From positions 280,245 through 344,244 of IMG/VR virus record IMGVR_UViG_3300019776_000324: a stretch of DNA of 64,000 nt. One strand, given 5' to 3'. Positions 2-55,754 of this stretch are shown here, in pieces; the first letter of the stretch is position 1; each line of letters starts with the position of its first letter. The notes under the pieces are model-generated. The model was given only the letters and a program-made list of their open reading frames with translations, was not told the origin of the DNA and ran no database searches. The position numbers and the translations under genes are program-made.

Positions 2-1141
2 TATTATACTCGCGAAGCGCCTGGTAGTATCATTATTTACATTGTGGATCCTAACAAGCCAGCTGAGCAACGAGATAATAAAAATGATATTATTGTAGCC
101 ATGTTAAGTTTAGATAAATGTCAATGGATTCCTGGTGCCTATACAGTTAATTCAGTCACTACAGACGAGGCGTATCGAGGTCGTGGACTTGGACATAGTT
201 TGTATGGTATAGCATTATCAATCTTAGGTCTTACATTAGTTTCTGGAACCGAACAAACATCTAGTGGTAGAAGTATGTGGAAAACAATAAGCAATTTTCC
301 TGGAGTAGACATTAAAGGTTATACCAAAGCAACAGATAATCAAGCAAAACAACTATTAAAACAAAATGGTGCTCAACCACTTACCGGAGACTATTGGACT
401 TTTCCTATCAAACAAGGTAAACACGAACTTAAAAGCACCATACCGGATGTGCCAACATATCATACTCAATTTGCTAAAGATGTGCCGTACCACAAAATCT
501 ATAGAACTGGTCTAATTGCCAAGTGGAATCCAGGTCGAACTAATACTGTAAATGAAATAGCCCGCATACCACAAAGCGAACTAGGTGACTGGGGAGAAGA
601 AGGAACTATTGTTCCACCAGAACATCCAGTAGAAAAGAAGCCATTGCCTGGCGGCAGTAAGTTTACCTATGCTGTAGATAAAAACAGCCAGGGCAATCTA
701 GAAATACTAATATTCGATGGCGAAAAGTTAGCTGCCGAATTAGACTTGTTTGAAACAGGTGATGTGCTGAACACTTGGGGTGTAGAAACTATTGTAGTTG
801 AACGCCCATATCGTGGACAGGGGTTGGGCAAAGCCTTATATGGTATTGCCTTAAGCATACTAAAACTTACCATAGAAGCTGGCTCAACACAAACACGACA
901 TGGCCAACAGATGTGGTTAATGCTTAACAGTATTCCAGGAGTAGAAGTCAAAGGCTACACTATGGTTCCTACTGCCAAGTATCAACCTAACAAGAATGAT
1001 ACCATTGTCAAGCAAGACAAAGACTGGACTCGTTATACATTCCCGGTTCATCCAGGAAAACAAAGTATGCGTAGTGGTCGCCCAGGTGCTGGACTTTATA
1101 CTAGTCAAGCAACTATGATAGCTAAATGGACAGGTAAATGA
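2..1141 (+). CDS. Tandem GNAT-like acetyltransferase domain protein (5' partial; frame open from window start)
   Basis: Two copies of an acetyl-CoA-binding motif A (YRGRGLGHSLY and YRGQGLGKALY), each followed by GIALSIL..G..QT..G..MW; no stop between position 2 and the GTG at 44. Confidence 0.7.
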   Translation, partial: YYTREAPGSIIIYIVDPNKPAEQRDNKNDIIVAMLSLDKCQWIPGAYTVNSVTTDEAYRGRGLGHSLYGIALSILGLTLVSGTEQTSSGRSMWKTISNFPGVDIKGYTKATDNQAKQLLKQNGAQPLTGDYWTFPIKQGKHELKSTIPDVPTYHTQFAKDVPYHKIYRTGLIAKWNPGRTNTVNEIARIPQSELGDWGEEGTIVPPEHPVEKKPLPGGSKFTYAVDKNSQGNLEILIFDGEKLAAELDLFETGDVLNTWGVETIVVERPYRGQGLGKALYGIALSILKLTIEAGSTQTRHGQQMWLMLNSIPGVEVKGYTMVPTAKYQPNKNDTIVKQDKDWTRYTFPVHPGKQSMRSGRPGAGLYTSQATMIAKWTGK

Positions 1142-1869
1142 CAACAGTTACCGGTGGCGTAGTAACAACTGATGGTGCATATACTGTACGCACTTTTGAA
1201 ACCTCTGGCACATTAACTGTGTCTGGCGGAACATTAACTGATGTGCAATACTTGTTGATTGCTGGCGGCGGTCGTGCCGCAGTTCCAACTAGTTCCTATG
1301 TGGCCGGTGGAGGTGCTGGTGGTGCTCTAACAGGCAACATTACTCTTAATGCTGGTACATATCCTGTAGTCATAGGTGAAGCTACAATAAGTAGTGCTTT
1401 TAATGATCTTGTAACTATACCCGGCGGCACAGGAGGATTTTATGGTAATGGATTCTCAGGTGGTTCAGGTGGTGGTGGTGGAGTAATAGGTGTTACTCAT
1501 ATAAATTTTCAGAACTTTGTTGCTGGCAATGGCACACCCGGACAAGGACATGCAGGGGGCAATCCCTATGGTGGTGGATATCCACCATTTGGCCCAGGTG
1601 GCGGTGGTGGTGCATCAGGACCCGGTGGACAAGGCAGTGCTGACGGAGTTGGTGGTGCAGGTGGCCCAGGCTTAGCCAGCGATATAACTGGTAATACTGT
1701 TTATTATGCAGGTGGCGGTGCTGGCAAAGGACCCAAAGGTATTGGGAATAATAGCCCCGGATACGACAACTACGGAGCTGGCGGTGGTTACTCAAGCACG
1801 GTAAATAATAACTACGGAGAGTTACTATCTCCACAACCCGGAGTGTTGATTTTAAGGTACCTAACATGA
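1138..1869 (+). CDS. Glycine-rich virion/tail-fibre-associated domain protein
   Basis: YTVRTF..SGT / YLLIAGGG / GGSGGG / YYAGGGAG / GVLILRY pattern typical of phage Gly-rich domains. Confidence 0.6.
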   Translation: MTTVTGGVVTTDGAYTVRTFETSGTLTVSGGTLTDVQYLLIAGGGRAAVPTSSYVAGGGAGGALTGNITLNAGTYPVVIGEATISSAFNDLVTIPGGTGGFYGNGFSGGSGGGGGVIGVTHINFQNFVAGNGTPGQGHAGGNPYGGGYPPFGPGGGGGASGPGGQGSADGVGGAGGPGLASDITGNTVYYAGGGAGKGPKGIGNNSPGYDNYGAGGGYSSTVNNNYGELLSPQPGVLILRYLT

Positions 1870-2078
1870 GATTTCAAGAAATAGTCGAAGCTAAAAACAC
1901 AAATCCTATTGTAAATTACAATTTGTGGACAGCACAGGTACAGATCAAACAACCTAACTATGTTGGCCGTATTGATGTTACTGTAACTGCTGCCAACGCA
2001 CAAGATGCTCGCTTGTTAATGAAATCACAGTATGGTGTTGAATTTTGGCAAATTGGCAGTGTTAAACAAGTAAAATGA
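1866..2078 (+). CDS. Small hypothetical protein with MRFQEIVE N-terminus (capsid-targeting-like)
   Basis: ORF with ATGA coupling on both sides. Confidence 0.6.
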   Translation: MRFQEIVEAKNTNPIVNYNLWTAQVQIKQPNYVGRIDVTVTAANAQDARLLMKSQYGVEFWQIGSVKQVK

Positions 2079-2437
2079 GACTCAAAGAATTCGAACAAAA
2101 AGGCACTGATGCTGAACATGTGCTTGCTTATGTAAACAGCATACATCACGGCTTCAATATTCCTGATACTATTTTAAATCACCCACAATGGCGCAAGACT
2201 CGTGTGCCACTAAACAAGCTACATATTCCCGACGAAGAAGGCGAAGACCTAGAAGATCCGTACAATCGAGTACAGTGGATTGACTATGATCAAGTTAAAA
2301 GCGTTGATCGCCAATACATTGAAACACATCCTATTGTAGTAGACACCAATGGGCATATTATCGACGGTAATCACCGTGCTATAGCCGCTAAACTAGGCGG
2401 CATGTTTGACATTCCGGCATACATACCCACCAAATAA
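2075..2437 (+). CDS. ParB/Srx N-terminal-like domain protein
   Basis: PIVVD..GHIIDGNHR motif; MRLKEF N-terminus. Confidence 0.65.
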   Translation: MRLKEFEQKGTDAEHVLAYVNSIHHGFNIPDTILNHPQWRKTRVPLNKLHIPDEEGEDLEDPYNRVQWIDYDQVKSVDRQYIETHPIVVDTNGHIIDGNHRAIAAKLGGMFDIPAYIPTK

Positions 2438-2455
2438 TATACAGCTAAATACAGC

Positions 2456-2749
2456 ATGGATAAGAAATTTGTGCGAGTATTAGCTGATGTACATTGCGAA
2501 TGGGAAGGCCTAGATCCTATCTATCGTTTGTATGTTAATGACGAACTATTTGCCGAGCGCACATGGACATGGGCCAGTGCTTATCTTGAAGAAAATCTAC
2601 AAATTGAAGCTGAACCCGGCGAATATACTATACGCTACGAATTAGTACAGCCGCATCTAGCTGAATTAAAAGTAGAAAATATCCGTGTTGATTTTGGACC
2701 CGGAGTTATAGAAAATAATGTACTAAGGATTACCAATGAGACTGTATGA
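2456..2749 (+). CDS. Hypothetical protein
   Basis: ORF preceded by the late-promoter motif CTAAATA at about 2445. Confidence 0.6.
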   Translation: MDKKFVRVLADVHCEWEGLDPIYRLYVNDELFAERTWTWASAYLEENLQIEAEPGEYTIRYELVQPHLAELKVENIRVDFGPGVIENNVLRITNETV

Positions 2750-2936
2750 ATTTGTTAACTTGACTGAAGAAGCAAGTGCTTGTAGCACCACAGCAGGCAG
2801 TATTGCTCCGGTAAGTTCACCCATTGGTGGAATGGTCGCAAGAAATGCAGGATCTTTCTTTGCTGGTAAATACACTACTGACGATGCAACGCCTAATACG
2901 CCTGCAGAGTACAAAAAGTATAAACGGAAGAAATAA
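2736..2936 (+). CDS. Small hypothetical head-associated protein (MRLYEF..LTEE)
   Basis: ORF overlapping both neighbours; capsid-targeting-like N-terminus. Confidence 0.55.
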   Translation: MRLYEFVNLTEEASACSTTAGSIAPVSSPIGGMVARNAGSFFAGKYTTDDATPNTPAEYKKYKRKK

Positions 2937-3376
2937 TGTTAGCTGATTTATTAAAAACTTACTTGGCCAGTACATTTTCGTACTATTTAAAAGCCCACAT
3001 GTTCCATTGGAATGTGGAAGGTCCAGACTTTGGCGAACTACATGGTTTCTTTTCACAAATTTATGAAGATGCGTTTGATGCAGTAGATCCTATTGCTGAA
3101 TTTATCCGTACTGCAGAAGAATATGCCCCAGGAAGCCTAACCCGCTTTCATGAATTAACACAAATACAGGACCAAACCAAGGTCCCTCGTGCCCGATTAA
3201 TGTTAGAAGAATTACTCGCAGATACACAGACCATGAAAGATCTAAGCAAACAAGTGTTTGATGTTTCAACCCAAGAAGGTCGTGATGATGTTGCAAACTT
3301 TGCCGCAGATAGACTAAGCCAACACGGCAAGTACATGTGGCAACTTAAGAGTTATTTGAAAGACGCTAGGGCATGA
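2936..3376 (+). CDS. dps: Dps/ferritin-like protein
   Basis: KAHMFHWNVEGPDFGELHGFFSQIYED..D.IAE.IR ferroxidase signature. Confidence 0.9.
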   Translation: MLADLLKTYLASTFSYYLKAHMFHWNVEGPDFGELHGFFSQIYEDAFDAVDPIAEFIRTAEEYAPGSLTRFHELTQIQDQTKVPRARLMLEELLADTQTMKDLSKQVFDVSTQEGRDDVANFAADRLSQHGKYMWQLKSYLKDARA

Positions 3377-3379
3377 TCA

Positions 3380-4000
3380 ATGCAAGACCATAACGATATA
3401 TACTCCATTGTAGAACGCCTCCGTATGTTGGAGGAAGGTCTTGACAAGAATCAAAAGAGTGTCAATCAACTCAGTGCCACATTTAAACCAAAAACAGTAG
3501 CAGTACTCACAGCCAAAACAGATCCTAAAAATCCTCTAGCCGGCAAGCTGGTTGGTGGCGCAGAAGAAAGCGTAGAGTCCGACGAAGAGCCATTGGAAGA
3601 AGCTATTACTAGCGAAGATGTGCTGGACAAAGTTAAAAAATCATTTGCTGATTATCTAAGTAATATAGCAGATGAAATCAAACAAGATTCCGATCTCAAA
3701 GACAAGAAAAAAGAAGATACTGATCTAAAGCAAAAAGAAAAGAAGGATCGTGATCTTGTTTCTAAACAAATCGATGAACATGGTACTAATCTTCCAGAAG
3801 CAGTCAAATGTGTCACTATGGAAGATGGTCGCGTTTGTGAAATACACGGCGATGACAACTCTGGGTTTGAGATCCACCACGGTAACCGTAGTTTACCAAC
3901 AAGATTTAAAGATTTAGCTGAAGCCGAAATGGCTTTAGAAATGTTTATGAGTCGTCGTCGTAAGACTGACGAAGCACAAGATTATATTGAAGAAGCTTAA
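3380..4000 (+). CDS. Hypothetical acidic/charged protein, probably virion-associated
   Basis: 206-aa ORF with LEE/xEE motifs. Confidence 0.6.
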   Translation: MQDHNDIYSIVERLRMLEEGLDKNQKSVNQLSATFKPKTVAVLTAKTDPKNPLAGKLVGGAEESVESDEEPLEEAITSEDVLDKVKKSFADYLSNIADEIKQDSDLKDKKKEDTDLKQKEKKDRDLVSKQIDEHGTNLPEAVKCVTMEDGRVCEIHGDDNSGFEIHHGNRSLPTRFKDLAEAEMALEMFMSRRRKTDEAQDYIEEA

Positions 4001-4012
4001 GGAAAAAAAGAA

Positions 4013-6514
4013 ATGAATTTGTTAAACCTATTTGAAGGACGCGAACCGCATCAACAAGCTATTGACAAGCTGGAACAGGCTCGTATTGATCACTTAAAAG
4101 AAAAAATGGATTACTATGCTAAACACGGCATGGTAGAACAATTCAAAAAAGCCAAAGCTGAACACGACAGTTATTTTAAAGTTCAAGATGAGTGCATGGG
4201 ATATGGTAGTGTTGTTGGCGAACAAGGCATTCCTGGTTCAGTACCAACAGAAAAGATTCCTGGCAAAGAAGACTTACTCCGAGGCAAGGGTCGTAGCTAC
4301 TACGAATCAGTCGAAGAAGTTAATCCAAGTAAAAAAGTATTCAAAGACAAAGCTGGTAAACCAGTAGGAGAGATTGGTATTGATCCTGAATCAAGTCCTG
4401 GCAATAGCGAATGGTATGTATATCATTACGGCACAGGTTATAGTGTTGTTGGATTCGATAGTGCCGCAGAAGCTAAACGCGAATTAATGTATGTTCACAA
4501 GCATCCAGAAGCGGTCGAAGGGCACGAATCAACATTTGACGAAGCTGGTATTCCTGGTAATGTTCCAGTTGAAAAGATTCCAGGTAAAGAAGATTTGCTA
4601 AAGGGCAAGGGTCGTAGCTACTACGAAGCCCAAGACCAAAAAAAAAATTCTGAAGAAGTAGATAAGCTACAAACAGCTGCAAGAGAGTTTATAGAATTAA
4701 TAAACGATCGCACTGGTCCTATCTATAAAGCATATTATCGTAGTTTTCCAAAAGGTTCTGCACTAGAAGCAGAACTGCGTAAACGCATTGCCGCCAAGTA
4801 TGGCGTTGCAGAAAAAGAACTTGCTAACGCCGAAGCTGGCGATCGTGCTCGTCGCATGTTTGGTAATAAACTCAATGAAGATCAAAAGTTACATGTAGGT
4901 GATCCTATCATTGTTACAGCTCCTAATGAGTTTGAAGGCAAGACTGGTGAGATTGCAGAGTTCAGCCCAAGTGGCGCATTTGTTGTTGTAAACTTATACA
5001 ACCACGGTGAACACAGCATGCACCTGAGTGATGTTGAGTTTAATCAATATGCCGCAGATCAAGAAGATGAAGATGACTGGTACGACGACGGTGCAGAAGA
5101 TACATTAGAAGAAGAACAAAAAGAATTCCTGTACACAGTTGAATGCGATGGCTACAACAAAGGTAACTTTGTTAATAAAAACGACGCAATCTTTAGTGCT
5201 CAGTACATGATCTACTATGGCGAAAAAGAATATAACAAGATTGAAGTTATTGAACTTAAAACAGGTGATGTAATCTGGGAATGGCATGGCAAGAAAGCAG
5301 ACAACGATGTTGCTCCTACAGAAGTAGAAGTAGGTGAAGGTTGGAGCAACAAGATGGTTGCTCAAAGAACCGGTCAAGCTCCAACACCATATTCAGTTTA
5401 TATCAAAGGTAAAGAATGGAAGAGCTTTGCTGACGATGATCATGCTGAAAATGTAGCTAACAAGTTAAGAGCTAAATTCAAAGCAGAAGGTAAAGATCCT
5501 AGTGTTATTACTATTGCACCTACTGACTACGATAAAGATCTTAAAGAATTCGCACCAGGTGGCGGATATCAAGAACCACCTCCACCAGTATTAAAGAAAA
5601 AAGATCCGTTTGATGACGATGATCGTAGTATCTATCCACGCAAGATTCAACAACTATTAACCAGTGGTGCTAAAGTAGATAGCCGTGTTCCTGGTGCTAT
5701 GGGACACATTATTGCAGCTAATGGCGAAATGATTAGAATGAAGCCATTGAACAAGCCATACAGCCAAAAGAAATATGCTTGGTATATTGATCAAGAGCGT
5801 GATGATAAACTTTTATTAAAGCAAGTTGAACCTAACCATTATGTATTGTATGATCGTGATTGGTTGCCACAAGGCACAACAGAGGCTGCTAATCCAGCAC
5901 AACAGGCCGCTATTGCCGTTGCTATGAAGAAGGCTGGCAAGAAACCTAAGAGTGTTGATGAAGGTATCATGGATGTTGTTAAACAAACATTCAACGACAA
6001 TGTAGTAGGTTGGCCAATGGGCACTTCTACTGAACAGTTTATACAAGGTTGGGCTAGAGATATTAAAAATCGCACAGGAAAAAATGTTCCAGTAGAAAAG
6101 TTAACACAGTTGTACAATAACTATGTTAAGCGTTCTGGTGAACTTATGCAATCACATGGCACCACTAACGAAGCTGAAACAGATTATTCTAAGCGTCGCC
6201 AGCGTGAGCGTGATGTAGATGCAGGTAAGCCCGTAGCAAAACAGCGCCAACCCAAGATGACTGATTATCAAAAGCGCCGTGCTCAGCAGAAGAAAGAAAT
6301 GGAACTAGGCGAGGATCAAGACACTAGTGGTGTTGAGAGCGCAATTATTCGTCGTATTATGGTAGCACACACAGACTTGTTACAACAGTTTGGCCCAGAA
6401 AAAGTCATGCAGGCCGCAGAAGAAGTTGCTTACAATGTAGGCGATGTTGACGAAATTGGTACCAGTGATGTCAGTGCTTGGGTACACGAAGTCAAACAAA
6501 TCCTTGGTGCCTAA
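4013..6514 (+). CDS. Modular polyprotein-like head protein (modules bounded by x-x-E sites; includes a KOW-like module)
   Basis: 833 aa; SD AAGGA; internal repeat; GDPIIVTAPNEFEGKTGEI resembles a KOW motif. Confidence 0.6.
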   Translation: MNLLNLFEGREPHQQAIDKLEQARIDHLKEKMDYYAKHGMVEQFKKAKAEHDSYFKVQDECMGYGSVVGEQGIPGSVPTEKIPGKEDLLRGKGRSYYESVEEVNPSKKVFKDKAGKPVGEIGIDPESSPGNSEWYVYHYGTGYSVVGFDSAAEAKRELMYVHKHPEAVEGHESTFDEAGIPGNVPVEKIPGKEDLLKGKGRSYYEAQDQKKNSEEVDKLQTAAREFIELINDRTGPIYKAYYRSFPKGSALEAELRKRIAAKYGVAEKELANAEAGDRARRMFGNKLNEDQKLHVGDPIIVTAPNEFEGKTGEIAEFSPSGAFVVVNLYNHGEHSMHLSDVEFNQYAADQEDEDDWYDDGAEDTLEEEQKEFLYTVECDGYNKGNFVNKNDAIFSAQYMIYYGEKEYNKIEVIELKTGDVIWEWHGKKADNDVAPTEVEVGEGWSNKMVAQRTGQAPTPYSVYIKGKEWKSFADDDHAENVANKLRAKFKAEGKDPSVITIAPTDYDKDLKEFAPGGGYQEPPPPVLKKKDPFDDDDRSIYPRKIQQLLTSGAKVDSRVPGAMGHIIAANGEMIRMKPLNKPYSQKKYAWYIDQERDDKLLLKQVEPNHYVLYDRDWLPQGTTEAANPAQQAAIAVAMKKAGKKPKSVDEGIMDVVKQTFNDNVVGWPMGTSTEQFIQGWARDIKNRTGKNVPVEKLTQLYNNYVKRSGELMQSHGTTNEAETDYSKRRQRERDVDAGKPVAKQRQPKMTDYQKRRAQQKKEMELGEDQDTSGVESAIIRRIMVAHTDLLQQFGPEKVMQAAEEVAYNVGDVDEIGTSDVSAWVHEVKQILGA
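4220..4627 (+). repeat. Two 87-nt in-frame direct repeats (4220-4306 and 4541-4627)
   Basis: EQGIPGSVPTEKIPGKEDLLRGKGRSYYE versus EAGIPGNVPVEKIPGKEDLLKGKGRSYYE. Confidence 0.9.
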
Positions 6515-7134
6515 TGAGAGCAGAAGAGTTCACAGTTAGTCTAGACGAAAAATTAGATGAAATTCTAGTTCGTCTCTGTGAACTTGTAGTTCAAGGTCAA
6601 AAAGAAAATCAAGACCTAGGCATGGTGGCTGCCGCTGTATTAGATCCCGATGATAATTGTGTAACAGGTATTAACTATCCTGCACGAGATGGTAAGCGTG
6701 TTCATGCCGAGCGTGCCGCTATAAACAACTATATTGATCGTTTTGGCCCTGTTCCTCCTGGCAGTATTGTTATTACAACATTAAGTCCATGCAATCAAGA
6801 TATGGATAGTCGAGCAGGAGAAAGTTGTCAAGCGTTATTAGATCAACACGGCATTGATTCAGTTTACTGTGGTTATGTTGATCCTACACAAGATAAGCAT
6901 CAAGTCGGCTTAACTGCTAATAAAAAAATACAAGCATTGTGTAAAGCATTCGCTGACACTTTTCTTAAAGACAAACTAGACGAACTTGAATTTTTAGGTA
7001 GCCCTTGCACCAAAGACTGTTCAGGTCATCGTGCCGGATATGCATGGGCACAAAGCAAAGGCGGTCGTGTTGCTAACAGTCCATTTAGTCCTAGCTTTAA
7101 TAACGGCAGTCAGCTTTATGTTGATGGTAAGTAA
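6514..7134 (+). CDS. Zn-dependent cytidine/RibD-type deaminase domain with a C-terminal Cys-containing module
   Basis: HAE..(TTLSPC)..C motif; likely start is the ATG at 6514 in a TAATG overlap (MRAEEF). Confidence 0.75.
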   Translation: MRAEEFTVSLDEKLDEILVRLCELVVQGQKENQDLGMVAAAVLDPDDNCVTGINYPARDGKRVHAERAAINNYIDRFGPVPPGSIVITTLSPCNQDMDSRAGESCQALLDQHGIDSVYCGYVDPTQDKHQVGLTANKKIQALCKAFADTFLKDKLDELEFLGSPCTKDCSGHRAGYAWAQSKGGRVANSPFSPSFNNGSQLYVDGK

Positions 7135-42971: not shown

Positions 42972-42987
42972 CTTATAAGTAATTATA

Positions 42988-43340
42988 GTTTCGCATTTTA
43001 GTAAAAATGCGTGGTGGGTCGGGCTTTAAAGAATTGTTGTAATTCCTTCGTAGGGAAGGCGCTGTGGACCCGGGTTCGATACCCGGCATCTCCACCGAAA
43101 GGTATTAGGTTAGTATTTTTCGGTGGGGATGAAATGGATTCGACATGGTGAGATACTGAAAGAGGCAACACGGTAGGCGATGACCGTAAATCAAGCAAAT
43201 CTCGTAAATGCAAAAGCATCTACAGGCGAAGTAACTGTTTCAGGCAAGAGCGTTAAGTTCTCTGCTCGTACAGCGAAAGCTTCTTTAGCAGTTTAATCAC
43301 TGCTTAGGGTAGGAAATACCTCGTAACAGAAACAACCTAA
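42988..43340 (+). ncRNA. ssrA: Circularly permuted (two-piece) tmRNA; tag AKASTGEVTVSGKSVKFSARTAKASLAV* at 43210-43296
   Basis: T-arm and CAUCUCCA (43070-43094) lie before the 5' end GGGGAUG (43125); acceptor stem with G3-U70; GGAUUCGAC; UAAAU-GCA resume context. Confidence 0.88.
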
Positions 43341-43366
43341 AACGGCACTTAATTGTGCCGTTTTTC
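43339..43366 (+). terminator. Intrinsic terminator after tmRNA
   Basis: AAAACGGCAC-TTAATT-GTGCCGTTTTT. Confidence 0.8.
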
Positions 43367-43411
43367 TTGACAAAAACATTTTATAGTATATACTTAGACA
43401 GTATAAATAAT
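43367..43411 (+). promoter_or_regulatory. sigma70 promoter followed by a TATAAATA late promoter
   Basis: TTGACA-16-TATACT; TATAAATA at about 43403. Confidence 0.5.
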
Positions 43412-50017: not shown

Positions 50018-50101
50018 GGAGTGGAAGCATCAATGGTGATGCACTGGACTGTAAATCCGGCGCCTACGGCACGACTGGTTCGATCCCAGTACACTCCACC
50101 A
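50018..50101 (+). tRNA. tRNA-Tyr(GTA)
   Basis: Cloverleaf with long variable arm; CCA. Confidence 0.9.
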
Positions 50102-50109
50102 ACAGATAA

Positions 50110-50188
50110 CTCGGTGTAGGAAAGTCTGGTTTAATCCGCCTGCTTTGGGAGCAGGAGAGCGAAGGTTCGAATCCTTCTACCGAGACCA
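50110..50188 (+). tRNA. tRNA-Pro(TGG)
   Basis: Cloverleaf; CCA. Confidence 0.9.
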
Positions 50189-50194
50189 AAATTT

Positions 50195-50270
50195 GGGGTT
50201 GTAGCTCAGCTGGGAGAGCAACTGCTTTGCAAGCAGAAGGTCAGGGGTTCGATCCCCCTCTTCTCCACCA
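50195..50270 (+). tRNA. tRNA-Ala(TGC), two U-U mismatches in the acceptor stem
   Basis: G3-U70; CCA. Confidence 0.85.
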
Positions 50271-50393
50271 AATTGTAGTTGTGACGATGGTACTAAGTTG
50301 CTAGAAGCTTAGTCTGACGGCTGGTTAGGGATACACGGTGTCCGCGGTATAAGTGAACCAGAACTTCGAGTGCTGATAGGTAAGCTATCTACT

Positions 50394-50496
50394 ATATTGA
50401 AATACATTATTAAAGAGTGCTCTTGTCGGAGACACACTCTTATCTGGACCGACAACTTCCGGGCGTAGCGCCGTTACGTTTAGTGTGTTTCAATAT
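50394..50496 (+). repeat. Long-stem hairpin element B
   Basis: ATATTGAAATACATTA...TAGTGTGTTTCAATAT, 16 bp with G-U pairs. Confidence 0.6.
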
Positions 50497-50504
50497 GGTA
50501 ATAT

Positions 50505-50581
50505 GTATCGCATCGTCTAAGGAAGGATACGGGACAGCACGAGCCCTAGATGTAGGTTCAAGTCCTACTGTAGATACACCA
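50505..50581 (+). pseudogene. Degenerate tRNA-like element (anticodon unclear, possibly Arg ACG)
   Basis: Intact T-arm and ACCA end; disrupted anticodon and acceptor stems. Confidence 0.5.
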
Positions 50582-50752
50582 TACACATAAACATTCCAAC
50601 AACAAACGGTAAGAGCAAATTAAAATTCCGTTGAGTTGTGCGAGGTCAATGTATTTGCTCTCCGATACCTCTGAGTGTTTAGTTGTATGGTATGACTCTG
50701 CTGGGTATGAATCAGATTCTCCGGTGGGTAAGTTACTGCCATACAATATTAT

Positions 50753-50830
50753 GCAACGGTGGCAGAGAGGCCCAATGCAAGGGACTGCAAATCCCTAAAA
50801 CCGTAGGTTCAAATCCTACCCGTTGCTCCA
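50753..50830 (+). tRNA. tRNA-Cys(GCA)
   Basis: Cloverleaf; U73; CCA. Confidence 0.9.
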
Positions 50831-50832
50831 GG

Positions 50833-50861
50833 TTGACATAGACACTAAAAGTCTATATAAT
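50833..50861 (+). promoter_or_regulatory. Consensus sigma70 promoter within the tRNA array
   Basis: TTGACA-17-TATAAT. Confidence 0.8.
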
Positions 50862-50870
50862 AGTTTTATT

Positions 50871-50947
50871 GGTTTGTTAGATCAGTTGGTTAGATTGCCG
50901 CACTGTCACTGCGGAGGCCACGGGTTCGAGTCCCGTACAGACCGCCA
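50871..50947 (+). tRNA. tRNA-Asp(GTC)
   Basis: Cloverleaf; CCA. Confidence 0.92.
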
Positions 50948-50954
50948 AGTTTTT

Positions 50955-51030
50955 GCTCTCATCGTCTAGAGGCCTAGGACACCGCCCTTTCACGGCGGGT
51001 ACACGAGTTCGAATCTCGTTGAGAGCGCCA
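50955..51030 (+). tRNA. tRNA-Glu(TTC)
   Basis: Cloverleaf; CCA. Confidence 0.92.
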
Positions 51031-51037
51031 GTACTAT

Positions 51038-51111
51038 CGCGGGTTGGAGAAGGAGTATCTCGAGGGTCTCATAAGCCCTAGTCTCTGGTGCGATTCCAGA
51101 ACCCGCAACCA
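51038..51111 (+). tRNA. tRNA-fMet(CAT), initiator-type
   Basis: C1:A72 mismatch; CAU anticodon. Confidence 0.85.
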
Positions 51112-51119
51112 GTATCAAT

Positions 51120-51194
51120 TCCCCGTTAGCTCAGCGGTAGAGCAGCAGACTGTTAATCTGTTGGTCCCTGGTTCGATCCCAGGATGGGGAGCCA
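51120..51194 (+). tRNA. tRNA-Asn(GTT)
   Basis: Cloverleaf; CCA. Confidence 0.92.
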
Positions 51195-51201
51195 GTATTA
51201 C

Positions 51202-51291
51202 GGAAATGTGGCAGAGCCCGGTTGATTGCAACAGTCTTGAAAACTGTCGACTGTAAAAGGTCCGTGAGTTCGAATCTCACCGTTTCCGCCA
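51202..51291 (+). tRNA. tRNA-Ser(TGA)
   Basis: Long variable arm; G73. Confidence 0.9.
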
Positions 51292-51380
51292 AGTTTCGCC
51301 CATAACGGATTTGACTAACTCGCCTCTCTAGCCTTGTGCAATATGATTGGAAGTGATCGAAGGAGTAAGTCACAGAATTT

Positions 51381-51468
51381 GGAAAATTGGCCGAGCGGTT
51401 AAGGCATCAGTTTGCTAAACTGACACTGAGTAATCGGTGGATAGGTTCGACTCCTATATTTTCCGCCA
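51381..51468 (+). tRNA. tRNA-Ser(GCT)
   Basis: Long variable arm; G73. Confidence 0.9.
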
Positions 51469-51474
51469 AACAAT

Positions 51475-51549
51475 GCAGGATTAATTCAGTGGTAGAATGT
51501 TTCGTTGCCAACGAAAATGTCATCGGTTCGAACCCGATATCCTGCTCCA
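51475..51549 (+). tRNA. tRNA-Gly(GCC)
   Basis: Cloverleaf; U73. Confidence 0.9.
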
Positions 51550-51553
51550 ATTT

Positions 51554-51629
51554 GGGTCTTTAGTGAAATGGATATCATATCGGTCTTCGAAACCGTAAGT
51601 TAGGGGTTCGAATCCTCTAGGACCCACCA
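51554..51629 (+). tRNA. tRNA-Arg(TCG)
   Basis: Cloverleaf; CCA. Confidence 0.88.
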
Positions 51630-51645
51630 TAACATAAGTAAAGGT

Positions 51646-52266
51646 ATGAAACAAGCACTAATATTAGGTTGTAGCCACGCTGCCGGAACCGAGATATTCC
51701 CAGATCCTGTTGATACTAAAAATCATAGTTATCCTGCAATAATAGCACAACACCTAGGATACACTGTCAACAATCAAGGAATAGCAGGTGGTAGTAACGA
51801 TGCTATGTTTCGTATCTTCGAAGAACAAAGATTAACACTCAACGAAAATGATATTGTTATAGCCTGCTGGTCTGGTTATACCCGAACAGAAATTTGGAAT
51901 GACGCAACTAATCGTTGGCAAGCTATTGCTCCTGGTAAGTCTGATGTTTATCCCGAGGAATACTTGAAGTATCAAGAACAATGGATAGTATATCATACCG
52001 ATTACCGTATTGGAAGATTGAATAAAATTAAAAATATTCTAGCGTTAAACTGCTTGGCCAATCAACAAAATATCAAAGTTATTAACATTGATAGTTTTTG
52101 GCCAGTTACAGATATGGTTTGGCCAGACGACATTTATTGGCCAGTTACAGATAACTTTTATAATTGGTGCAGTGAACAAAATTACCCTCACACAGACTGG
52201 GGACATTATTTTGAATCAGCACATGAAGAATTTGCAAAATTTGTAGTTAAGCATTTGCCCCGATAG
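51646..52266 (+). CDS. SGNH/GDSL-like hydrolase paralog 5
   Basis: LGCSH..G; YP; GIAGGSND...R; GHY. Confidence 0.55.
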   Translation: MKQALILGCSHAAGTEIFPDPVDTKNHSYPAIIAQHLGYTVNNQGIAGGSNDAMFRIFEEQRLTLNENDIVIACWSGYTRTEIWNDATNRWQAIAPGKSDVYPEEYLKYQEQWIVYHTDYRIGRLNKIKNILALNCLANQQNIKVINIDSFWPVTDMVWPDDIYWPVTDNFYNWCSEQNYPHTDWGHYFESAHEEFAKFVVKHLPR

Positions 52267-52283
52267 CTCAGTTGGTTAGAGCA
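52257..52283 (+). pseudogene. 5' fragment of a tRNA truncated at the HNH gene
   Basis: GCCCCGA-TA-GCTCAGTTGGTTAGAGC-A, then TAAATA; no 3' half found. Confidence 0.65.
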
Positions 52284-52310
52284 TAAATACATGCATACGG
52301 AGGTCTTACC

Positions 52311-52694
52311 ATGCCAATATCAACTTGTAAAAATTGTAGTGAAGAATTTAAGCACGGCTACACAAGCACAGGAGTCTATTGTTCTATAAAATGCACTAAA
52401 GAAGGACAACGCAAAGACAGACGACAAAATTTTCTCGAAGGGAAAATGGTTAATCGTGGACTAATGAAAGCGCATCTAGTAGACATATACGGATGGCAAT
52501 GTGCATGCTGTAAGGGGAAGACCTGGCAAGGTCAACTAATTCCACTAGAGCTAGATCATATTGACGGAAATGCTGGTGATAACAGGCCTGAAAATTTGAG
52601 ATTGTTATGTCCAAATTGCCATTCGCAGACGCCAACACATAAAGCAAAAAATAAAGGAAACGGAAGAGGCAGTAGAGGACTTCCGTGGTATTAA
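52311..52694 (+). mobile_element. Free-standing HNH homing-type endonuclease gene
   Basis: C..C zinc motifs; LELDHIDG...DN..ENLRLLCPNCH; SD GGAGG. Confidence 0.85.
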
Positions 52695-52695
52695 C

Positions 52696-52769
52696 AGCCG
52701 GTTAGTTAAATGGTATAACGGACGCTTGATAAGCGTTTATTACAAGTTCAATTCTTGTACTGGCTACCA
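52696..52769 (+). tRNA. tRNA-Ile(GAT)
   Basis: Cloverleaf; CCA. Confidence 0.85.
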
Positions 52770-52786
52770 GTAGTAAACAGCAATAT

Positions 52787-52860
52787 GAGTCTCTGGTATA
52801 ATGGCATTACATCGGTCTCCAAAACCGCAGATCGGGGTTCGATTCCCTGGAGATTCGCCA
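52787..52860 (+). tRNA. tRNA-Trp(CCA)
   Basis: Cloverleaf; G73. Confidence 0.88.
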
Positions 52861-52878
52861 ACTTAAAGAAAGAAGAAA

Positions 52879-53352
52879 ATGAAGTTCAATATTCCACACA
52901 TTAAACAATTTATAGAAGCGCAAGGTCCAAACACTCGTATCTATATTGGTGTGGATAGTGAACGAGTTCGAGGCGCTGACAAGCAATGGTATGCTGTATA
53001 TACTGCCGCTATTGTTGTACACATCAATGGTAACAATGGTTGTAAGTTATTTGGCGAAGTATCTCGTGAGCGTGACTATGATCGTGTAGATCGTCCTAAC
53101 ACTCGCTTGATGACCGAAGTGTATAAAGTAAGCGAACTATACTTGAAACTAGCAGAAGTATTGGAAGGCCGTGCTGTGGAAGTTCACTTGGATATTAACC
53201 CAGATGATCATCACGCTAGTAGCAATGTAGTGGCGCAGGCTATCGGTTATATTCGTGGCACTTGTAATGTAGAACCTTTGGTTAAGCCTCGTGCATTTGC
53301 CGCAAGTTATGCCGCAGACAGAATGAGAAGTTTGAAGGTTGCTAACGGCTAG
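52879..53352 (+). CDS. RNase H-like protein (YkuK/DUF458-like)
   Basis: IYIGVDS; RLMTEV; VEVHLDIN; AASYAAD. Confidence 0.7.
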   Translation: MKFNIPHIKQFIEAQGPNTRIYIGVDSERVRGADKQWYAVYTAAIVVHINGNNGCKLFGEVSRERDYDRVDRPNTRLMTEVYKVSELYLKLAEVLEGRAVEVHLDINPDDHHASSNVVAQAIGYIRGTCNVEPLVKPRAFAASYAADRMRSLKVANG

Positions 53353-53375
53353 CAACAGTGTTATAATAGTAGCAC

Positions 53376-53452
53376 GGGCCGGTAGCTCATTCGGTTAGAG
53401 CAGAGGACTCATAATCCTTTGGTGGAGTGTTCGAATCACTCTCGGCCCACCA
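53376..53452 (+). tRNA. tRNA(CAT), probably Ile2 (lysidine type)
   Basis: Body resembles bacterial Ile2 (GAGCAG..ACUCAUAAU..UUGGU). Confidence 0.8.
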
Positions 53453-53459
53453 GTATTAT

Positions 53460-53542
53460 GCCCCGTTGGTGGAATTGGTAGACACGCTGGTCTTAGAAGC
53501 CAGTGCTTAGGCGTGCGAGTTCGAGTCTCGCATGGGGCACCA
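53460..53542 (+). tRNA. tRNA-Leu(TAG)
   Basis: Leu-type D loop; variable arm. Confidence 0.9.
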
Positions 53543-53549
53543 GTAGCAT

Positions 53550-53635
53550 GCGAGTGTGGTGAAATAGGTAGACACGACAGACTTAAAATCTGTTCCTATA
53601 ACGGGGTGCCAGTTCGATTCTGGCCATTCGCACCA
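53550..53635 (+). tRNA. tRNA-Leu(TAA)
   Basis: Leu-type D loop; variable arm. Confidence 0.9.
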
Positions 53636-53703
53636 ATAATTTAGGAGTTGTTATGTACAAAAATGAAAAGGCCTTCCATCGATCGTAAATGATCGGAGGA
53701 AGT

Positions 53704-54030
53704 ATGAGCAGAACAAAAAGATTTAAACATGATAAATGGTTAATTAAAGAAAATCGTTTATTACAGGATTTTGAAAGAGTGAGCGGCACTTACACTTGGG
53801 TTTATGTTGACATAGATCCTACTAGTAAGGAAGCTCGTAAGCGTATAGCAAAACTACACAGTGATGCTAAAAAGGGAGTGATGCGTTGGCGTGGGCCAGG
53901 TTGGTTTGTCCACGAATATCATCAAGTTCCTTATCGCCAACAAGCTCGGCGTGAACTACATAAGTTCATGAAAAATCCTGATTATGAAGTACAAATACCG
54001 CGTAAGCCACATTTGACTTACTGGTATTAA
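53704..54030 (+). CDS. Hypothetical basic protein
   Basis: SD GGAGG before MSRTKRF. Confidence 0.6.
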   Translation: MSRTKRFKHDKWLIKENRLLQDFERVSGTYTWVYVDIDPTSKEARKRIAKLHSDAKKGVMRWRGPGWFVHEYHQVPYRQQARRELHKFMKNPDYEVQIPRKPHLTYWY

Positions 54031-54040
54031 CAGTTTCAAA

Positions 54041-54114
54041 GCGGGATTCGTAAAATGGTATTACCTTAGATTTCCAATCTAAAGTCAGGAGTTCGATTCT
54101 CCTATCCCGCTCCA
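54041..54114 (+). tRNA. tRNA-Gly(TCC)
   Basis: Cloverleaf; CCA. Confidence 0.9.
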
Positions 54115-54152
54115 CTACTCCGTCTTAAGGTTGGACGAAAACTAACCCCTAT

Positions 54153-54226
54153 TGAGCTATGGTGTAATGGCAACACTACGGATTTTGATTCCGTCATTCT
54201 AGGTTCGAGTCCTAGTAGCTCTGCCA
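54153..54226 (+). tRNA. tRNA-Gln(TTG)
   Basis: Cloverleaf; G73. Confidence 0.88.
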
Positions 54227-54279
54227 AACAACACGGCTCCCTTCTGTTGCTTAATTGAACAGCTAGGGAGTTCTTTTAT

Positions 54280-54354
54280 GCCTCGTTAGCTCAGGAGTAG
54301 AGCAGGACTCTTACAAAGTCAAGGTCGGTGGTGCGAAACCATCACGAGGCACCA
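54280..54354 (+). tRNA. tRNA-Val(TAC)
   Basis: Cloverleaf; atypical T loop UGCGAAA. Confidence 0.85.
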
Positions 54355-54370
54355 CTTATAAAGGAACTAT

Positions 54371-54601
54371 ATGTTTAAAGTATATTGGACGGATCACAGT
54401 AACACACCGCAGGGTATTTACACAAATACCTTAACAGGTGCGTTGCGACTTACTGAAGAAAAGCGTCAAGCTGGTTATACTTTTGTAACAATGGTTTCAG
54501 AAGATCCTAACAGTGTAGGTAAATCTGGAGTTGATAGTGTAGTAGATGGTAAGTTGCCCGATGGCGAAGATTATACTTGGATGATGAGGAGAACACAATG
54601 A
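54371..54601 (+). CDS. Hypothetical protein
   Basis: SD AAGGA. Confidence 0.6.
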   Translation: MFKVYWTDHSNTPQGIYTNTLTGALRLTEEKRQAGYTFVTMVSEDPNSVGKSGVDSVVDGKLPDGEDYTWMMRRTQ

Positions 54602-54978
54602 AGATAACTGAAGATCAATTTAGATACGAATGGTTTTCTGGCACCGGTAAAGGAGGACAGCATCGTAACAAGCATCAAAATTGTTGTCGTTGCGTTCATG
54701 TGCCTACTGGAATTACTGCCAACGGCACTAATAGTCGCAGTCGCGAAGACAATAAGGCAAATGCCCGAGCAGTATGTCTAGCTCGTGTTGGGCGCTACTT
54801 CCACAAAGATACAGAACGATTCCGTGCTACAAACGAAAGAGTGAGAACTTATCATGCTGTTGACAACATAGTATATGATCATGCCAGTGGCGAGAAAGAT
54901 ACCTATCAAAATGTTGTTACCAAAGGCAACATTGATCACTTAATCGAGGCAAGAGCAAAGACCGTAGGAGGCAAATAA
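54598..54978 (+). CDS. GGQ peptidyl-tRNA hydrolysis domain protein (ArfB/PrfH-like)
   Basis: FSGTGKGGQHRNK..C.R..HVPTGI....SRS..DN; no codon-recognition domain. Confidence 0.85.
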   Translation: MKITEDQFRYEWFSGTGKGGQHRNKHQNCCRCVHVPTGITANGTNSRSREDNKANARAVCLARVGRYFHKDTERFRATNERVRTYHAVDNIVYDHASGEKDTYQNVVTKGNIDHLIEARAKTVGGK

Positions 54979-55370
54979 TGAGATTTTATGCGGTAGGTAA
55001 CATGTACCTAAGTTCAATACAACAAGGAATACAGGCTGCACACTGCGTGGGCGAAATGGCCTTGAAGATTCTTGGCAACAAGTTAGTCAGTGAATGGTTA
55101 CATACACACAAGACATTAATTTGTCTTAACGGTGGCAATAACAAATCACTAAATGACTTTTATGATTTAGTAAGATATCAAAGTCAATTCCCTGTGGCTA
55201 AGTTTCATGAAGATGAAGAAAGTCTTGGCGGTGTATTGACTTGTGTTGGTATTATTGTACCCAAAGAGATTTATGAAGCAGATTTAGATGATCCTTATCT
55301 TGTAGATAGACTAGGATCAGATGGATTTGAAATTGCTAGAGCACTGAAATCAATGCCCTTAGCAAGATAA
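54978..55370 (+). CDS. Peptidyl-tRNA hydrolase 2 (Pth2)-like protein
   Basis: QQGIQAAH; W....K.LICL.G; F.ED...L....T.VG. Confidence 0.65.
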   Translation: MRFYAVGNMYLSSIQQGIQAAHCVGEMALKILGNKLVSEWLHTHKTLICLNGGNNKSLNDFYDLVRYQSQFPVAKFHEDEESLGGVLTCVGIIVPKEIYEADLDDPYLVDRLGSDGFEIARALKSMPLAR

Positions 55371-55446
55371 GCACCCTAAGCTAACCTGGTGGAAGCGTAT
55401 GCCTGAAGAGCATGAGGGCTTGGTTCGAAACCAAGAGGGTGCACCA
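55371..55446 (+). tRNA. tRNA-Phe(GAA)
   Basis: Cloverleaf; CCA. Confidence 0.88.
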
Positions 55447-55448
55447 AA

Positions 55449-55538
55449 GCCCGGGTGGCGAAATCGGTAGACGCACTTCTCTCAAAAGGAAGAAGGAAAA
55501 ACACCTAGTTGTGAGTTCGAATCTCATCCCGGGCACCA
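55449..55538 (+). tRNA. tRNA-Leu(CAA)
   Basis: Leu-type D loop; variable arm. Confidence 0.88.
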
Positions 55539-55539
55539 C

Positions 55540-55613
55540 GCTCTCATAGTATAATGGCATTACACTACATTGGTAATGTAGAAACTCTGGATCGTAACCA
55601 GGTGAGAGCACCA
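55540..55613 (+). tRNA. tRNA-Thr(GGT)
   Basis: Cloverleaf; atypical T loop AUCGUAA. Confidence 0.8.
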
Positions 55614-55619
55614 AACAAT

Positions 55620-55695
55620 GGTGCAGTTAGTGTAGAGGTTAGCACCCCGGATTGTGATTCCGTTAGCATGGGTTCGAATCCCATACAGCACCCCA
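55620..55695 (+). tRNA. tRNA-His(GTG)
   Basis: Encoded G-1 opposite C73. Confidence 0.88.
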
Positions 55696-55697
55696 GA

Positions 55698-55726
55698 TTG
55701 ACAAATAAACCCATTTCGGGTATAAT
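55698..55726 (+). promoter_or_regulatory. Consensus sigma70 promoter (copy 1)
   Basis: TTGACA-17-TATAAT; near-identical to 57361. Confidence 0.85.
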
Positions 55727-55754
55727 GTAGTATAAACTAAGAAAGGAGCAAGCA

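What the first reader, a model, noticed from the sequence alone, without database searches (positions are those of the whole stretch)
2..7134. Probable head-packaged enzyme cargo marked by a capsid-targeting-like N-terminus
Seen: four ORFs start MRFQEIVE (1866), MRLKEFE (2075), MRLYEF..LTEE (2736) and MRAEEF..LDE (6514), and another starts MNLLNLFE (4013). Known: T4 internal proteins carry an N-terminal capsid-targeting sequence (MKTYQEFIAE type) removed by the prohead protease after Glu. Inference: these proteins are packaged and injected with the DNA. The cargo includes a ParB-like domain and a deaminase, alongside a tandem GNAT protein whose two domains are split by a VNE site, so it could be an injected host-modification or anti-defence toolkit.
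Basis: partly seen in the sequence, partly recalled or inferred. Interest (0 to 1): 0.65.

Follow-up and report, generated by a model that had tools for sequence, protein, structure and literature searches.

The report
Capsid-targeting tags on phage enzyme cargo
A 344-kb uncultivated T4-related jumbo phage, and many of its relatives, put the same short N-terminal peptide, very like phage T4's capsid-targeting sequence, on a changing set of unrelated enzymes, so these are probably loaded into the phage head and delivered with the DNA, though no virion data exist yet.

Summary
All five ORF starts are as described. Genome-wide, M-[RK]-x-x-E-[FI] sits at 7 longest-ORF starts against 0.86 expected. 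It occurs at only 3 of 2039 internal Met. The sites cluster in two loci. The "tandem GNAT" protein is cut by the window edge: it is 663 aa, has three GNAT-like regions, and starts with the tag itself.

The genome encodes a T4-type S77 prohead protease and a gp23 capsid protein. The tag core (E-F-[IVL]-x-E) matches T4 IPII/IPIII. The second tag (MNLLNLFE type) resembles the N-terminus of T4 Alt.

In 52 related loci, 183 of 912 ORFs carry a tag, against 26 of 5227 internal Met. These ORFs have shuffled domain content: GNAT, ParB-like, deaminase, Pol-beta NTase-amidoligase and DUF6321. A DNA pattern for MRAxEFIxE hits at least 120 IMG/VR stretches, and 96 of 98 examined matches open ORFs of at least 50 aa. 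One 66-aa cargo copies the capsid protein's predicted cleavage region.

My best reading is T4-style head-targeted cargo that the prohead protease trims (confidence about 0.65). No cultured relative has the tags, so packaging and injection are inferred, not shown.

The parts
2..1141 (+). 3' two-thirds of a 663-aa protein with three GNAT-like regions. The gene starts 851 nt upstream of the window (genome 279394) with the class-1 tag MRFKEFVTEY. Internal module junctions lie at ISE|IARI (aa 245-247) and VNE|IARIPQ (aa 467-469, in the window).
1138..1869 (+). Untagged glycine-rich 243-aa protein (PHROG 2295, function unknown). It overlaps both neighbours by ATGA.
1866..2078 (+). 70-aa protein with the class-1 tag MRFQEIVE|A and no known domain. 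It is conserved in relatives.
2075..2437 (+). 120-aa ParB/Srx-like protein (DGNHR motif) with the class-1 tag MRLKEFE. In relatives L006 and L023 the same domain is fused to a GNAT module behind a single tag.
2456..2749 (+). Untagged 97-aa protein, conserved and of nearly constant length in relatives.
2736..2936 (+). 66-aa protein with tag MRLYEFVNLTE|E and a basic C-terminus. The stretch after the tag copies the capsid protein's predicted maturation-site region.
2936..3376 (+). Untagged Dps/ferritin-like protein, 83-89% identical in relatives.
3380..4000 (+). Untagged 206-aa protein, conserved in relatives, function unknown.
4013..6514 (+). 833-aa protein with the class-2 (Alt-like) tag MNLLNLFE|G. 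It has no family match. Its modules are reshuffled in relatives into proteins of 264-1704 aa.
6514..7134 (+). 206-aa CDA-fold deaminase (HAE / PC..C zinc motifs) with tag MRAEEFTVSLDE|K. In relative L050 the domain is embedded in a 1074-aa NTase protein.

Best explanation
The window opens inside a late-expressed, hypervariable cargo operon of a 344-kb T4-related jumbo phage. Each variable gene begins with one of two short tags. Class 1 is M-[RK]-[AIL]-x-[ED]-F-[VIL]-x-E. Class 2 is M-N-[LI]-x-[DE]-L-F-E and sits on the large proteins.

By analogy with the T4 capsid-targeting sequence of IPII/IPIII and with the N-terminus of T4 Alt, the tag docks the newly made protein onto the scaffolding core while the prohead assembles. 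The S77 prohead protease then cuts after the Glu of [FY]-[LIV]-x-E. The trimmed protein stays in the head and leaves with the DNA at infection.

The cargo is a mix-and-match set of effector domains: GNAT, ParB/Srx-like, deaminase, Pol-beta NTase plus amidoligase, DUF6321, and in relatives a GH19 lysozyme-like domain. This is the repertoire described for phage 'polyvalent proteins'. It exists here either as separate tagged genes or as fusions behind one tag. Fusion junctions resemble protease sites.

Shown: the tag, its enrichment and distribution, its presence on unrelated proteins, the protease and capsid genes, and the sequence parallels. Inferred: docking, cleavage, packaging, injection and the anti-host role.
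For: 1. Enrichment and clustering in the genome.
2. Among the tagged proteins of this genome, only three 126-133-aa proteins are paralogues. The others share nothing beyond the first 12 aa.
3. In 52 related loci, 183 of 912 ORFs are tagged against 26 of 5227 internal Met.
4. Whole-genome pattern scans of relatives give 15+3, 9+4 and 11+2 hits against 0+0, 4+1 and 2+1 for the reversed control.
5. The DNA pattern for MRAxEFIxE finds at least 120 IMG/VR stretches. Of 98 matches examined, 96 open ORFs of 50 aa or more. They fall into 22 clusters.
6. All 5 large tag-bearing contigs tested encode Peptidase_S77.
7. T4 IPII and IPIII start MKTYQEFIAE and T4 Alt starts MELITELFDE. Alt is processed at ITE-6 (PMC5694885). 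T-even internal proteins share only the targeting sequence (PMC3012670, PMC9958956).
8. 69 of 102 class-1 tags have [LIV]-x-E within 13 aa, mostly ending at residue 9, against 69 of 459 untagged ORFs.
9. The same [FY]-[LI]-x-E occurs at the predicted capsid-protein site (YLKE|N) and at the protease's own N-terminus (YLQE|H).
10. The profile of the 66-aa cargo family picks the capsid protein, residues 40-58, as its best non-self hit among 476 ORFs (E 1.9e-4).
11. Synonymous codons at tag positions 3, 5 and 6 follow background usage, and the upstream DNA differs between genes, so selection acts on the peptide.
12. The operon starts after a terminator hairpin and an ATAAATA motif that also precedes sheath, head and fibre genes.
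13. Tagged genes are variable and reshuffled, while the untagged neighbours are conserved.
14. The domain repertoire matches that of packaged polyvalent proteins (PMC5512222).
15. In PA5oct, the proteins in the syntenic variable slots and the 73-aa head-module protein (which starts MKINDIITEG) were detected in virions by mass spectrometry.
Against: There is no virion proteomics, transcript data or experiment for any tagged protein.

The cultured relatives tested (PA5oct, Vibrio phage 2.275.O, Atu_ph07, Phosso) show no clear tag clusters. The cargo has no homologues in cultured phages.

About a third of class-1 tags lack [LIV]-x-E near the N-terminus. Most deaminase orthologues are among them. 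Their tag-like residues are also kept at an internal junction where the domain is fused, so for that protein the segment may be part of the fold.

Four untagged genes are interspersed in the operon.

Arg at position 2 is almost always AGA or CGA, and 5 of 9 tagged genes in this genome start in an ATGA overlap. Part of the motif therefore reflects nucleotide-level constraints.

The late-promoter assignment of ATAAATA is an inference. The capsid protein's cleavage site is predicted, not measured.
Confidence: 0.65

Rival explanations
1. The tag is a real, selected peptide signal, but for something other than head packaging. It could be recognised by the phage's own ClpA-like unfoldase or DnaJ chaperone encoded just upstream. 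Cleavage after Glu5 would expose Phe or Leu and so create an N-degron. It could also direct proteins to another virion compartment such as the tail or baseplate.
For: ClpA-like and DnaJ-like genes lie just upstream of the operon and are syntenic in relatives. Many tags have [AIL]-x-E at residues 3-5 followed by Phe or Leu. The second tagged locus lies between tail genes and the terminase gene.
Against: The tag core and the class-2 tag match the two known T4 head-cargo N-termini. The tag end matches the predicted capsid-protein and protease cleavage sites. No Clp adaptor or degron evidence was found.
Confidence: 0.15
2. The shared N-termini are a by-product of gene architecture. Genes in tightly packed arrays are translationally coupled through ATGA overlaps, favoured early codons add to the effect, and recombination spreads a common 5' end. 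No protein-targeting role is involved.
For: Position-2 Arg is AGA or CGA in 55 of 59 tags, against 33% in the background. Five of 9 tagged genes in this genome start in ATGA overlaps. Domain shuffling is rampant.
Against: Synonymous sites at positions 3, 5 and 6 follow background codon usage, and upstream DNA is unrelated between genes. The conserved residues extend to position 9. Untagged genes in the same overlapping array lack the motif. The motif is almost absent from the other roughly 470 ORFs, many of which also overlap.
Confidence: 0.07
3. The similarity is due to chance or to simple paralogy: the proteins are diverged copies of one family and the N-terminus is its best-kept part.
For: Three of the tagged proteins (126, 132 and 133 aa) are paralogues. 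The largest tagged group in IMG/VR is that same roughly 125-aa family.
Against: Binomial P is 3e-5 in this genome alone. The tagged proteins include GNAT, CDA deaminase, ParB/Srx, Pol-beta NTase, DUF6321 and GH19 folds. There are 22-24 blastp clusters.
Confidence: 0.02

Closest known systems
T4 capsid-targeting sequence of internal proteins IPI/IPII/IPIII (Mullaney and Black 1996; reviews PMC3012670, PMC9958956)
   Same: Both are N-terminal peptides of about 10 residues on otherwise unrelated proteins. They share the core E-F-I-x-E ending in a prohead-protease Glu site. The genes sit in variable loci. The genome has the same S77 protease, scaffold and gp23-type head machinery.
   Different: The consensus differs (M-R-A-x-E-F-I-x-E against M-K-T-Y-Q-E-F-I-A-E, one residue shorter before EF). 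The phage belongs to a distant jumbo clade related to PA5oct, not the T-evens. The cargo includes enzymes of 120-1400 aa as well as small proteins, and there are at least 11 tagged genes per genome. Nothing has been shown experimentally.
T4 Alt (packaged, injected ADP-ribosyltransferase; N-terminus MELITE|LFDE, PMC5694885)
   Same: The class-2 tags (MNLLNLFE, MNILELD and, in relatives, MNLYDLFNEE) resemble Alt's N-terminus. As in Alt, they sit on large enzymatic proteins.
   Different: No ADP-ribosyltransferase domain was found. The proteins carry a Pol-beta NTase plus amidoligase, or have no known domain. The resemblance is limited to about 8 residues.
Polyvalent proteins of phages and conjugative elements (Iyer et al. 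2017, PMC5512222)
   Same: The domain repertoire is the same: GNAT, Pol-beta NTase and ParB-like. Domains are shuffled and fused (ParB+GNAT; NTase+amidoligase+deaminase). Delivery with the DNA is predicted in both cases.
   Different: Here many domains are separate genes, each with its own short tag. No MuF/MPTase or ART hallmark domains were seen in the proteins scanned. Processing is proposed to be by the prohead protease rather than by an embedded peptidase.
Propeptide-bearing ejection and inner-body proteins of phiKZ/SPN3US-type giant phages (PMC5694885, PMC10052503)
   Same: These are also many head-internal proteins cut after Glu by a gp21-related protease.
   Different: Those phages use long, heterogeneous propeptides and A/S/G-x-E sites, not a short shared N-terminal tag. 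The phage lineage is also different.

Membership tests
T4-type capsid-targeting-sequence cargo | A short N-terminal peptide is shared by otherwise unrelated proteins of one phage. | tested here: met
   this genome; relatives.
T4-type capsid-targeting-sequence cargo | The genome encodes the T4-type head core machinery: S77 prohead protease, scaffold and gp23 capsid protein. | tested here: met
   Peptidase_S77 E 6e-24 and Gp23 E 1e-97. The gene order portal, small core proteins, protease, scaffold-like, MCP is the same as in T4 and PA5oct.
T4-type capsid-targeting-sequence cargo | The tag ends in a prohead-protease site ([LI]-x-E followed by the cut). | tested here: inconclusive
   69 of 102 class-1 and 18 of 26 class-2 tags have [LIV]-x-E within 13 aa, against 15% of untagged ORFs. 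The remainder, including most deaminase orthologues, do not. Cleavage itself is untested.
T4-type capsid-targeting-sequence cargo | Sequence resemblance to MKTYQEFIAE. | tested here: inconclusive
   The core E-F-I-A-E is identical in one gene of this genome (genome 127896), and the consensus E-F-[VIL]-x-E is shared. The peptide is too short to establish homology.
T4-type capsid-targeting-sequence cargo | Late expression together with the head genes. | tested here: inconclusive
   An ATAAATA motif lies upstream of the operon and of structural genes, a terminator hairpin precedes it, and there is no excess of sigma-70-like sites. No RNA data are available.
T4-type capsid-targeting-sequence cargo | The protein is present in virions with the tag removed, and the tag is sufficient to carry a foreign protein into heads. 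| not testable with these tools
   No cultured member exists. There is only indirect support from PA5oct virion mass-spectrometry flags on proteins in the syntenic slots.
Polyvalent proteins (Iyer et al. 2017) | Several effector domains of the typical repertoire occur in one polypeptide. | tested here: met
   NTP_transf_2 plus Amidoligase_2 in the 1399-aa protein. Three GNAT-like regions in the 663-aa protein. ParB+GNAT and NTase+deaminase fusions in relatives.
Polyvalent proteins (Iyer et al. 2017) | Hallmark MuF/MPTase or ART domains are present. | tested here: not met
   None appeared in the Pfam, PHROG or NCBIfam scans of the cargo proteins.
T4 Alt family | An ADP-ribosyltransferase catalytic domain is present. 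| tested here: not met
   The class-2-tagged proteins have no ART match. Only the N-terminal 8 or so residues resemble Alt.

The most novel reading that the evidence does not exclude
A large clade of uncultivated T4-related jumbo phages uses two portable N-terminal address tags, one IP-like and one Alt-like, to load an exchangeable arsenal of ten or more enzymes into the capsid. The arsenal includes acetyltransferases, a deaminase, ParB-type nucleases, an NTase-amidoligase and lysozyme-like hydrolases. Domain junctions double as prohead-protease sites, so polyvalent proteins are cut into separate effectors inside the head. One small cargo mimics the capsid protein's own cleavage region.
Probability: 0.45. 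Interest if true: 0.75.

Novelty: new variant of a known kind. Interest (0 to 1): 0.62.

Why it matters
If the tags do what the T4 sequence does, they give a simple sequence rule for listing the injected proteins of hundreds of uncultivated jumbo phages. Such first-minute effectors are otherwise almost impossible to recognise from sequence. The rule would show that capsid targeting by a short peptide is an old and general feature of the T4 superfamily, not a peculiarity of the T-evens. It would also connect that mechanism to the 'polyvalent protein' effector repertoire. The tagged set contains many families with no known fold or function, which are candidates for new anti-defence or host-takeover activities. 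The tag could also be used to load foreign proteins into large capsids.

Tried and rejected
- Cultured-phage searches found no homologues. Megablast of the region and tblastn of the 833-aa, 66-aa and 132-aa proteins against 50,697 phage records gave nothing. The GNAT protein gave only a short Campylobacter-phage match.
- Tag pattern scans of cultured relatives found no clusters to anchor the claim experimentally. This covers PA5oct, Vibrio phage 2.275.O, Atu_ph07 and Phosso.
- I began fetching the whole PA5oct record to test tag against virion-MS flags. I stopped after one 50-kb block, because PA5oct lacks the tag system and the test would have little power.
- The strict T4 late promoter TATAAATA occurs only 14 times and is not a general signal here. 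The shorter ATAAATA is more informative.
No verdict was obtained.
- An AlphaFold2 model of the roughly 125-aa tagged family had mean pLDDT 70.6. Residues 1-20 scored about 55. It gave no Foldseek match in BFVD or PDB at E <= 0.001.
- A PDB sequence search and NCBIfam added nothing specific for the deaminase.
- Chance, DNA repeats and simple paralogy were considered and rejected.
- The large protein searches, read mapping and sequencing-run tools were not used.
Full report
**Where the window lies.** The window is the last 64 kb of a 344,244-bp IMG/VR virus record. The record has direct terminal repeats and 40.5% G+C. The genome encodes a T4-type prohead protease (Peptidase_S77, E 6e-24) and a gp23-type major capsid protein (E 1e-97). 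These sit in a head module ordered portal, two small proteins, protease, scaffold-like protein, capsid protein. T4 and PA5oct have the same order. By capsid protein, the nearest cultured phages are only about 65% identical: Vibrio phage 2.275.O and Pseudomonas phage PA5oct.

**Checking the observation.** The deaminase starts at the ATG at 6514, which overlaps the stop of the preceding gene by one base, and its orthologues start at the same place. The first ORF is cut by the window edge. The whole gene (genome 279394-281385) encodes 663 aa with three GNAT-like regions and itself begins MRFKEFVTEY. Immediately upstream lie two further tagged genes:
- a 183-aa DUF6321 protein (MRASDFITEA);
- a 1399-aa protein with a Pol-beta nucleotidyltransferase domain and an amidoligase domain, starting MNILELD.

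A second locus at genome 127.9-129.9 kb holds three paralogous tagged proteins of 126-133 aa. It lies between tail genes and the gene that Atu_ph07 annotates as the large terminase.

**Is it more than chance?** The strict motif M[RK]..E[FI] sits at 7 longest-ORF starts, where positional composition predicts 0.86 (binomial 3e-5). It occurs at 3 of 2039 internal Met. A six-frame scan finds 10 matches in the whole genome, 8 of them within 18 codons of the preceding stop. Apart from the three paralogues, the tagged proteins share no detectable similarity beyond the first 12 residues.

**The tag in relatives.**
- 52 IMG/VR loci carrying the deaminase orthologue were fetched. In them, 183 of 912 ORFs begin with a class-1 or class-2 tag, against 26 of 5227 internal Met.
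- The class-1 profile from 102 distinct tags is M-[RK]-[AIL]-x-[ED]-F-[VIL]-x-E. Class 2 is M-[NF]-[LIA]-x-[DE]-L-[FY]-[EN].
- Whole-genome pattern scans of five relatives gave, in three of them, 15+3, 9+4 and 11+2 hits against 0+0, 4+1 and 2+1 for the reversed control. The other two gave 5+1 against 0+0 and 2+7 against 3+3. The same two loci recur in several of them.
My own rough estimate of the chance expectation is a handful. Of the 98 matches examined, 96 open ORFs of at least 50 aa and 89 lie within 25 codons of the preceding in-frame stop.
- Those ORFs form 22 blastp clusters. They include a GH19 lysozyme-like protein, ParB_N plus DUF6886, DUF6321 and GNAT.
- The contigs share many genes with this genome. 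All five large ones tested carry Peptidase_S77.

**Comparison with T4, using the T4 record itself.**
- IPII and IPIII begin MKTYQEFIAE followed by Ala. One tagged gene in this genome reads MRAREFIAE.
- Alt begins MELITELFDE and is known to be cut at ITE-6 (PMC5694885). The class-2 tags on the 833-aa and 1399-aa proteins resemble it.
- T4 gp23, gp24 and gp21 carry FLTE, LLRE and LLIE at the positions the review gives for their cleavages (PMC9958956).
- In this phage the same [FY]-[LI]-x-E occurs at the protease N-terminus (YLQE) and in the capsid protein at YLKE, directly before the conserved N-arm.
- The 66-aa cargo family aligns with that capsid stretch: tag, Glu, then NAS.G.T.SG.IAT. Its profile picks the capsid protein, residues 40-58, as the best non-self hit among 476 ORFs (E 1.9e-4).
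- 69 of 102 class-1 tags have [LIV]-x-E in the first 13 residues, most often ending at residue 9. The figure for untagged ORFs is 15%.

**The level at which selection acts.** Upstream DNA differs between tagged genes. Synonymous codon choice at positions 3, 5 and 6 follows background usage. Position 2 is the exception. Arg there is AGA or CGA in 55 of 59 cases, and five of the nine tagged genes in this genome start in an ATGA stop-start overlap. Part of the preference for R, K or N at position 2 is therefore probably a nucleotide-level effect.

**Architecture of the locus.**
- A terminator-like hairpin (genome 274606-274626) is followed by ATAAATA and then the 1399-aa gene. From there to the deaminase the genes overlap or nearly touch.
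- ATAAATA is under-represented in the genome: 39 and 7 copies on the two strands, against about 71 expected per strand. Of those 46 copies, 25 lie within 45 nt upstream of a start, including the sheath, head and fibre genes. I read it as a late-promoter candidate, but this is an inference.
- Tagged genes are the variable ones. ParB is fused to a GNAT module in L006 and L023. The DUF6321 module ends proteins of 245-487 aa. Pieces of the 833-aa and 1399-aa proteins are rearranged. In L050 the deaminase lies inside the NTase protein.
- The untagged 97-aa, Dps-like and 206-aa genes are conserved and of nearly constant length.
Relatives keep this boundary as [LIV]-x-E followed by IARIPQ, and it occurs twice in the 663-aa protein. 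That is consistent with a protease site, but it does not prove one.

**Indirect experimental support.** The PA5oct annotation flags proteins detected in virions by mass spectrometry. Three kinds of protein are flagged:
- the homologue of the 202-aa gene bordering the second locus;
- the genes occupying the equivalent variable slots, one of which starts MKLFEVF;
- the 73-aa head-module protein, which starts MKINDIITEG.

The scaffold-like protein is not flagged. However, PA5oct, Vibrio phage 2.275.O, Atu_ph07 and Phosso do not show the tag clusters. The cargo also has no homologues in cultured phages. No tagged protein has therefore been observed in a particle.

**Interpretation.** The best-supported reading is T4-style head targeting. 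The tag docks the protein on the scaffolding core. The S77 protease removes the tag after Glu. The protein stays with the DNA and enters the host with it. The cargo domains (GNAT, Pol-beta NTase, ParB-like) are the ones described for packaged polyvalent proteins (PMC5512222). I put this at about 0.65. The rivals are:
- a real signal with another purpose, such as a link to the upstream ClpA-like and DnaJ-like genes or targeting to the tail (0.15);
- a by-product of coupled, overlapping genes (0.07);
- chance or paralogy (0.02).

**Points against the interpretation.** There are no particle data. A third of the tags lack a nearby [LIV]-x-E. The deaminase's tag-like residues persist at an internal junction when the domain is fused. 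Untagged genes are interspersed in the operon. The codon bias at position 2 points to constraints other than the peptide.

**Novelty.** Capsid targeting by a short N-terminal peptide is known for the T-even internal proteins. I found no paper that extends it to this jumbo-phage clade. The consensus, the clade, the two tag classes and the size and enzymatic nature of the cargo differ from T4. I therefore rate it a new variant of a known kind.

Noticed in passing
window 42983-43387: The phage encodes a two-piece (permuted) tmRNA of the betaproteobacterial type (Rfam beta_tmRNA 129 bits, tmRNA_permuted 127 bits; also found by ARAGORN). This hints at a betaproteobacterial host.
   Followed up: partly
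window 50018-60775: A cluster of about 29 tRNA genes covers most amino acids and is interspersed with small ORFs.
   Followed up: no
outside the window, genome 268048-271191 (L057 covers part): DnaJ-like and ClpA-like genes lie just upstream of the cargo operon, in the same order in relatives L047 and L050. A link to handling of the tagged proteins is possible but untested.
   Followed up: no
window 2736-2936 and genome 90990-92186: After its tag, the 66-aa cargo copies the capsid protein's predicted maturation-site region and N-arm start. It then ends in a basic tail. It could be a substrate mimic or a capsid-binding peptide.
   Followed up: partly
genome 127896-129949 (L058 9896-11946) and loci L069-L147: A family of roughly 125-aa tagged proteins, often in tandem arrays of 2-4, is the commonest tagged cargo in IMG/VR. 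It has a conserved Y..YR.GVA core and an SPVK.FKGYKR end. The AF2 model has pLDDT 70.6 and no structural match was found.
   Followed up: partly
all tagged gene starts, e.g. window 1866, 2075; genome 278846, 279394, 129548: Arg at tag position 2 is AGA or CGA in 55 of 59 tags (33% in the background). Five of nine tagged genes in this genome start in ATGA overlaps. This is a nucleotide-level constraint layered on the peptide motif.
   Followed up: partly
whole genome; e.g. just upstream of genome 274650, 124735, 118149, 88050: ATAAATA is under-represented overall, but 25 of 46 copies lie within 45 nt upstream of starts, many of them structural genes. It is a candidate late promoter. The full T4 form TATAAATA is rare.
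   Followed up: partly
window about 4226-4310 and 4547-4631: The 833-aa protein contains a motif of about 28 residues twice (IPG..P.EKIPGKEDLL.GKGRSYYE). No family match was found.
   Followed up: no
window 2936-3376: A Dps/ferritin-like gene sits in the middle of the cargo operon. It is untagged and 83-89% identical in relatives. Its role there is unexplained.
   Followed up: no
window 6970-7134: The deaminase has a C-terminal Cys-rich extension (GSPCTKDCSGH.AGY.WA) outside the Pfam deaminase match. Its function is unknown.
   Followed up: no
L050 8135-11359: In this relative the deaminase domain is embedded in a 1074-aa NTase protein. The junction reads ..DIDE then SASDYQIHN, so a protease-like site precedes a tag-like stretch that lacks its Met-Arg.
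   Followed up: partly
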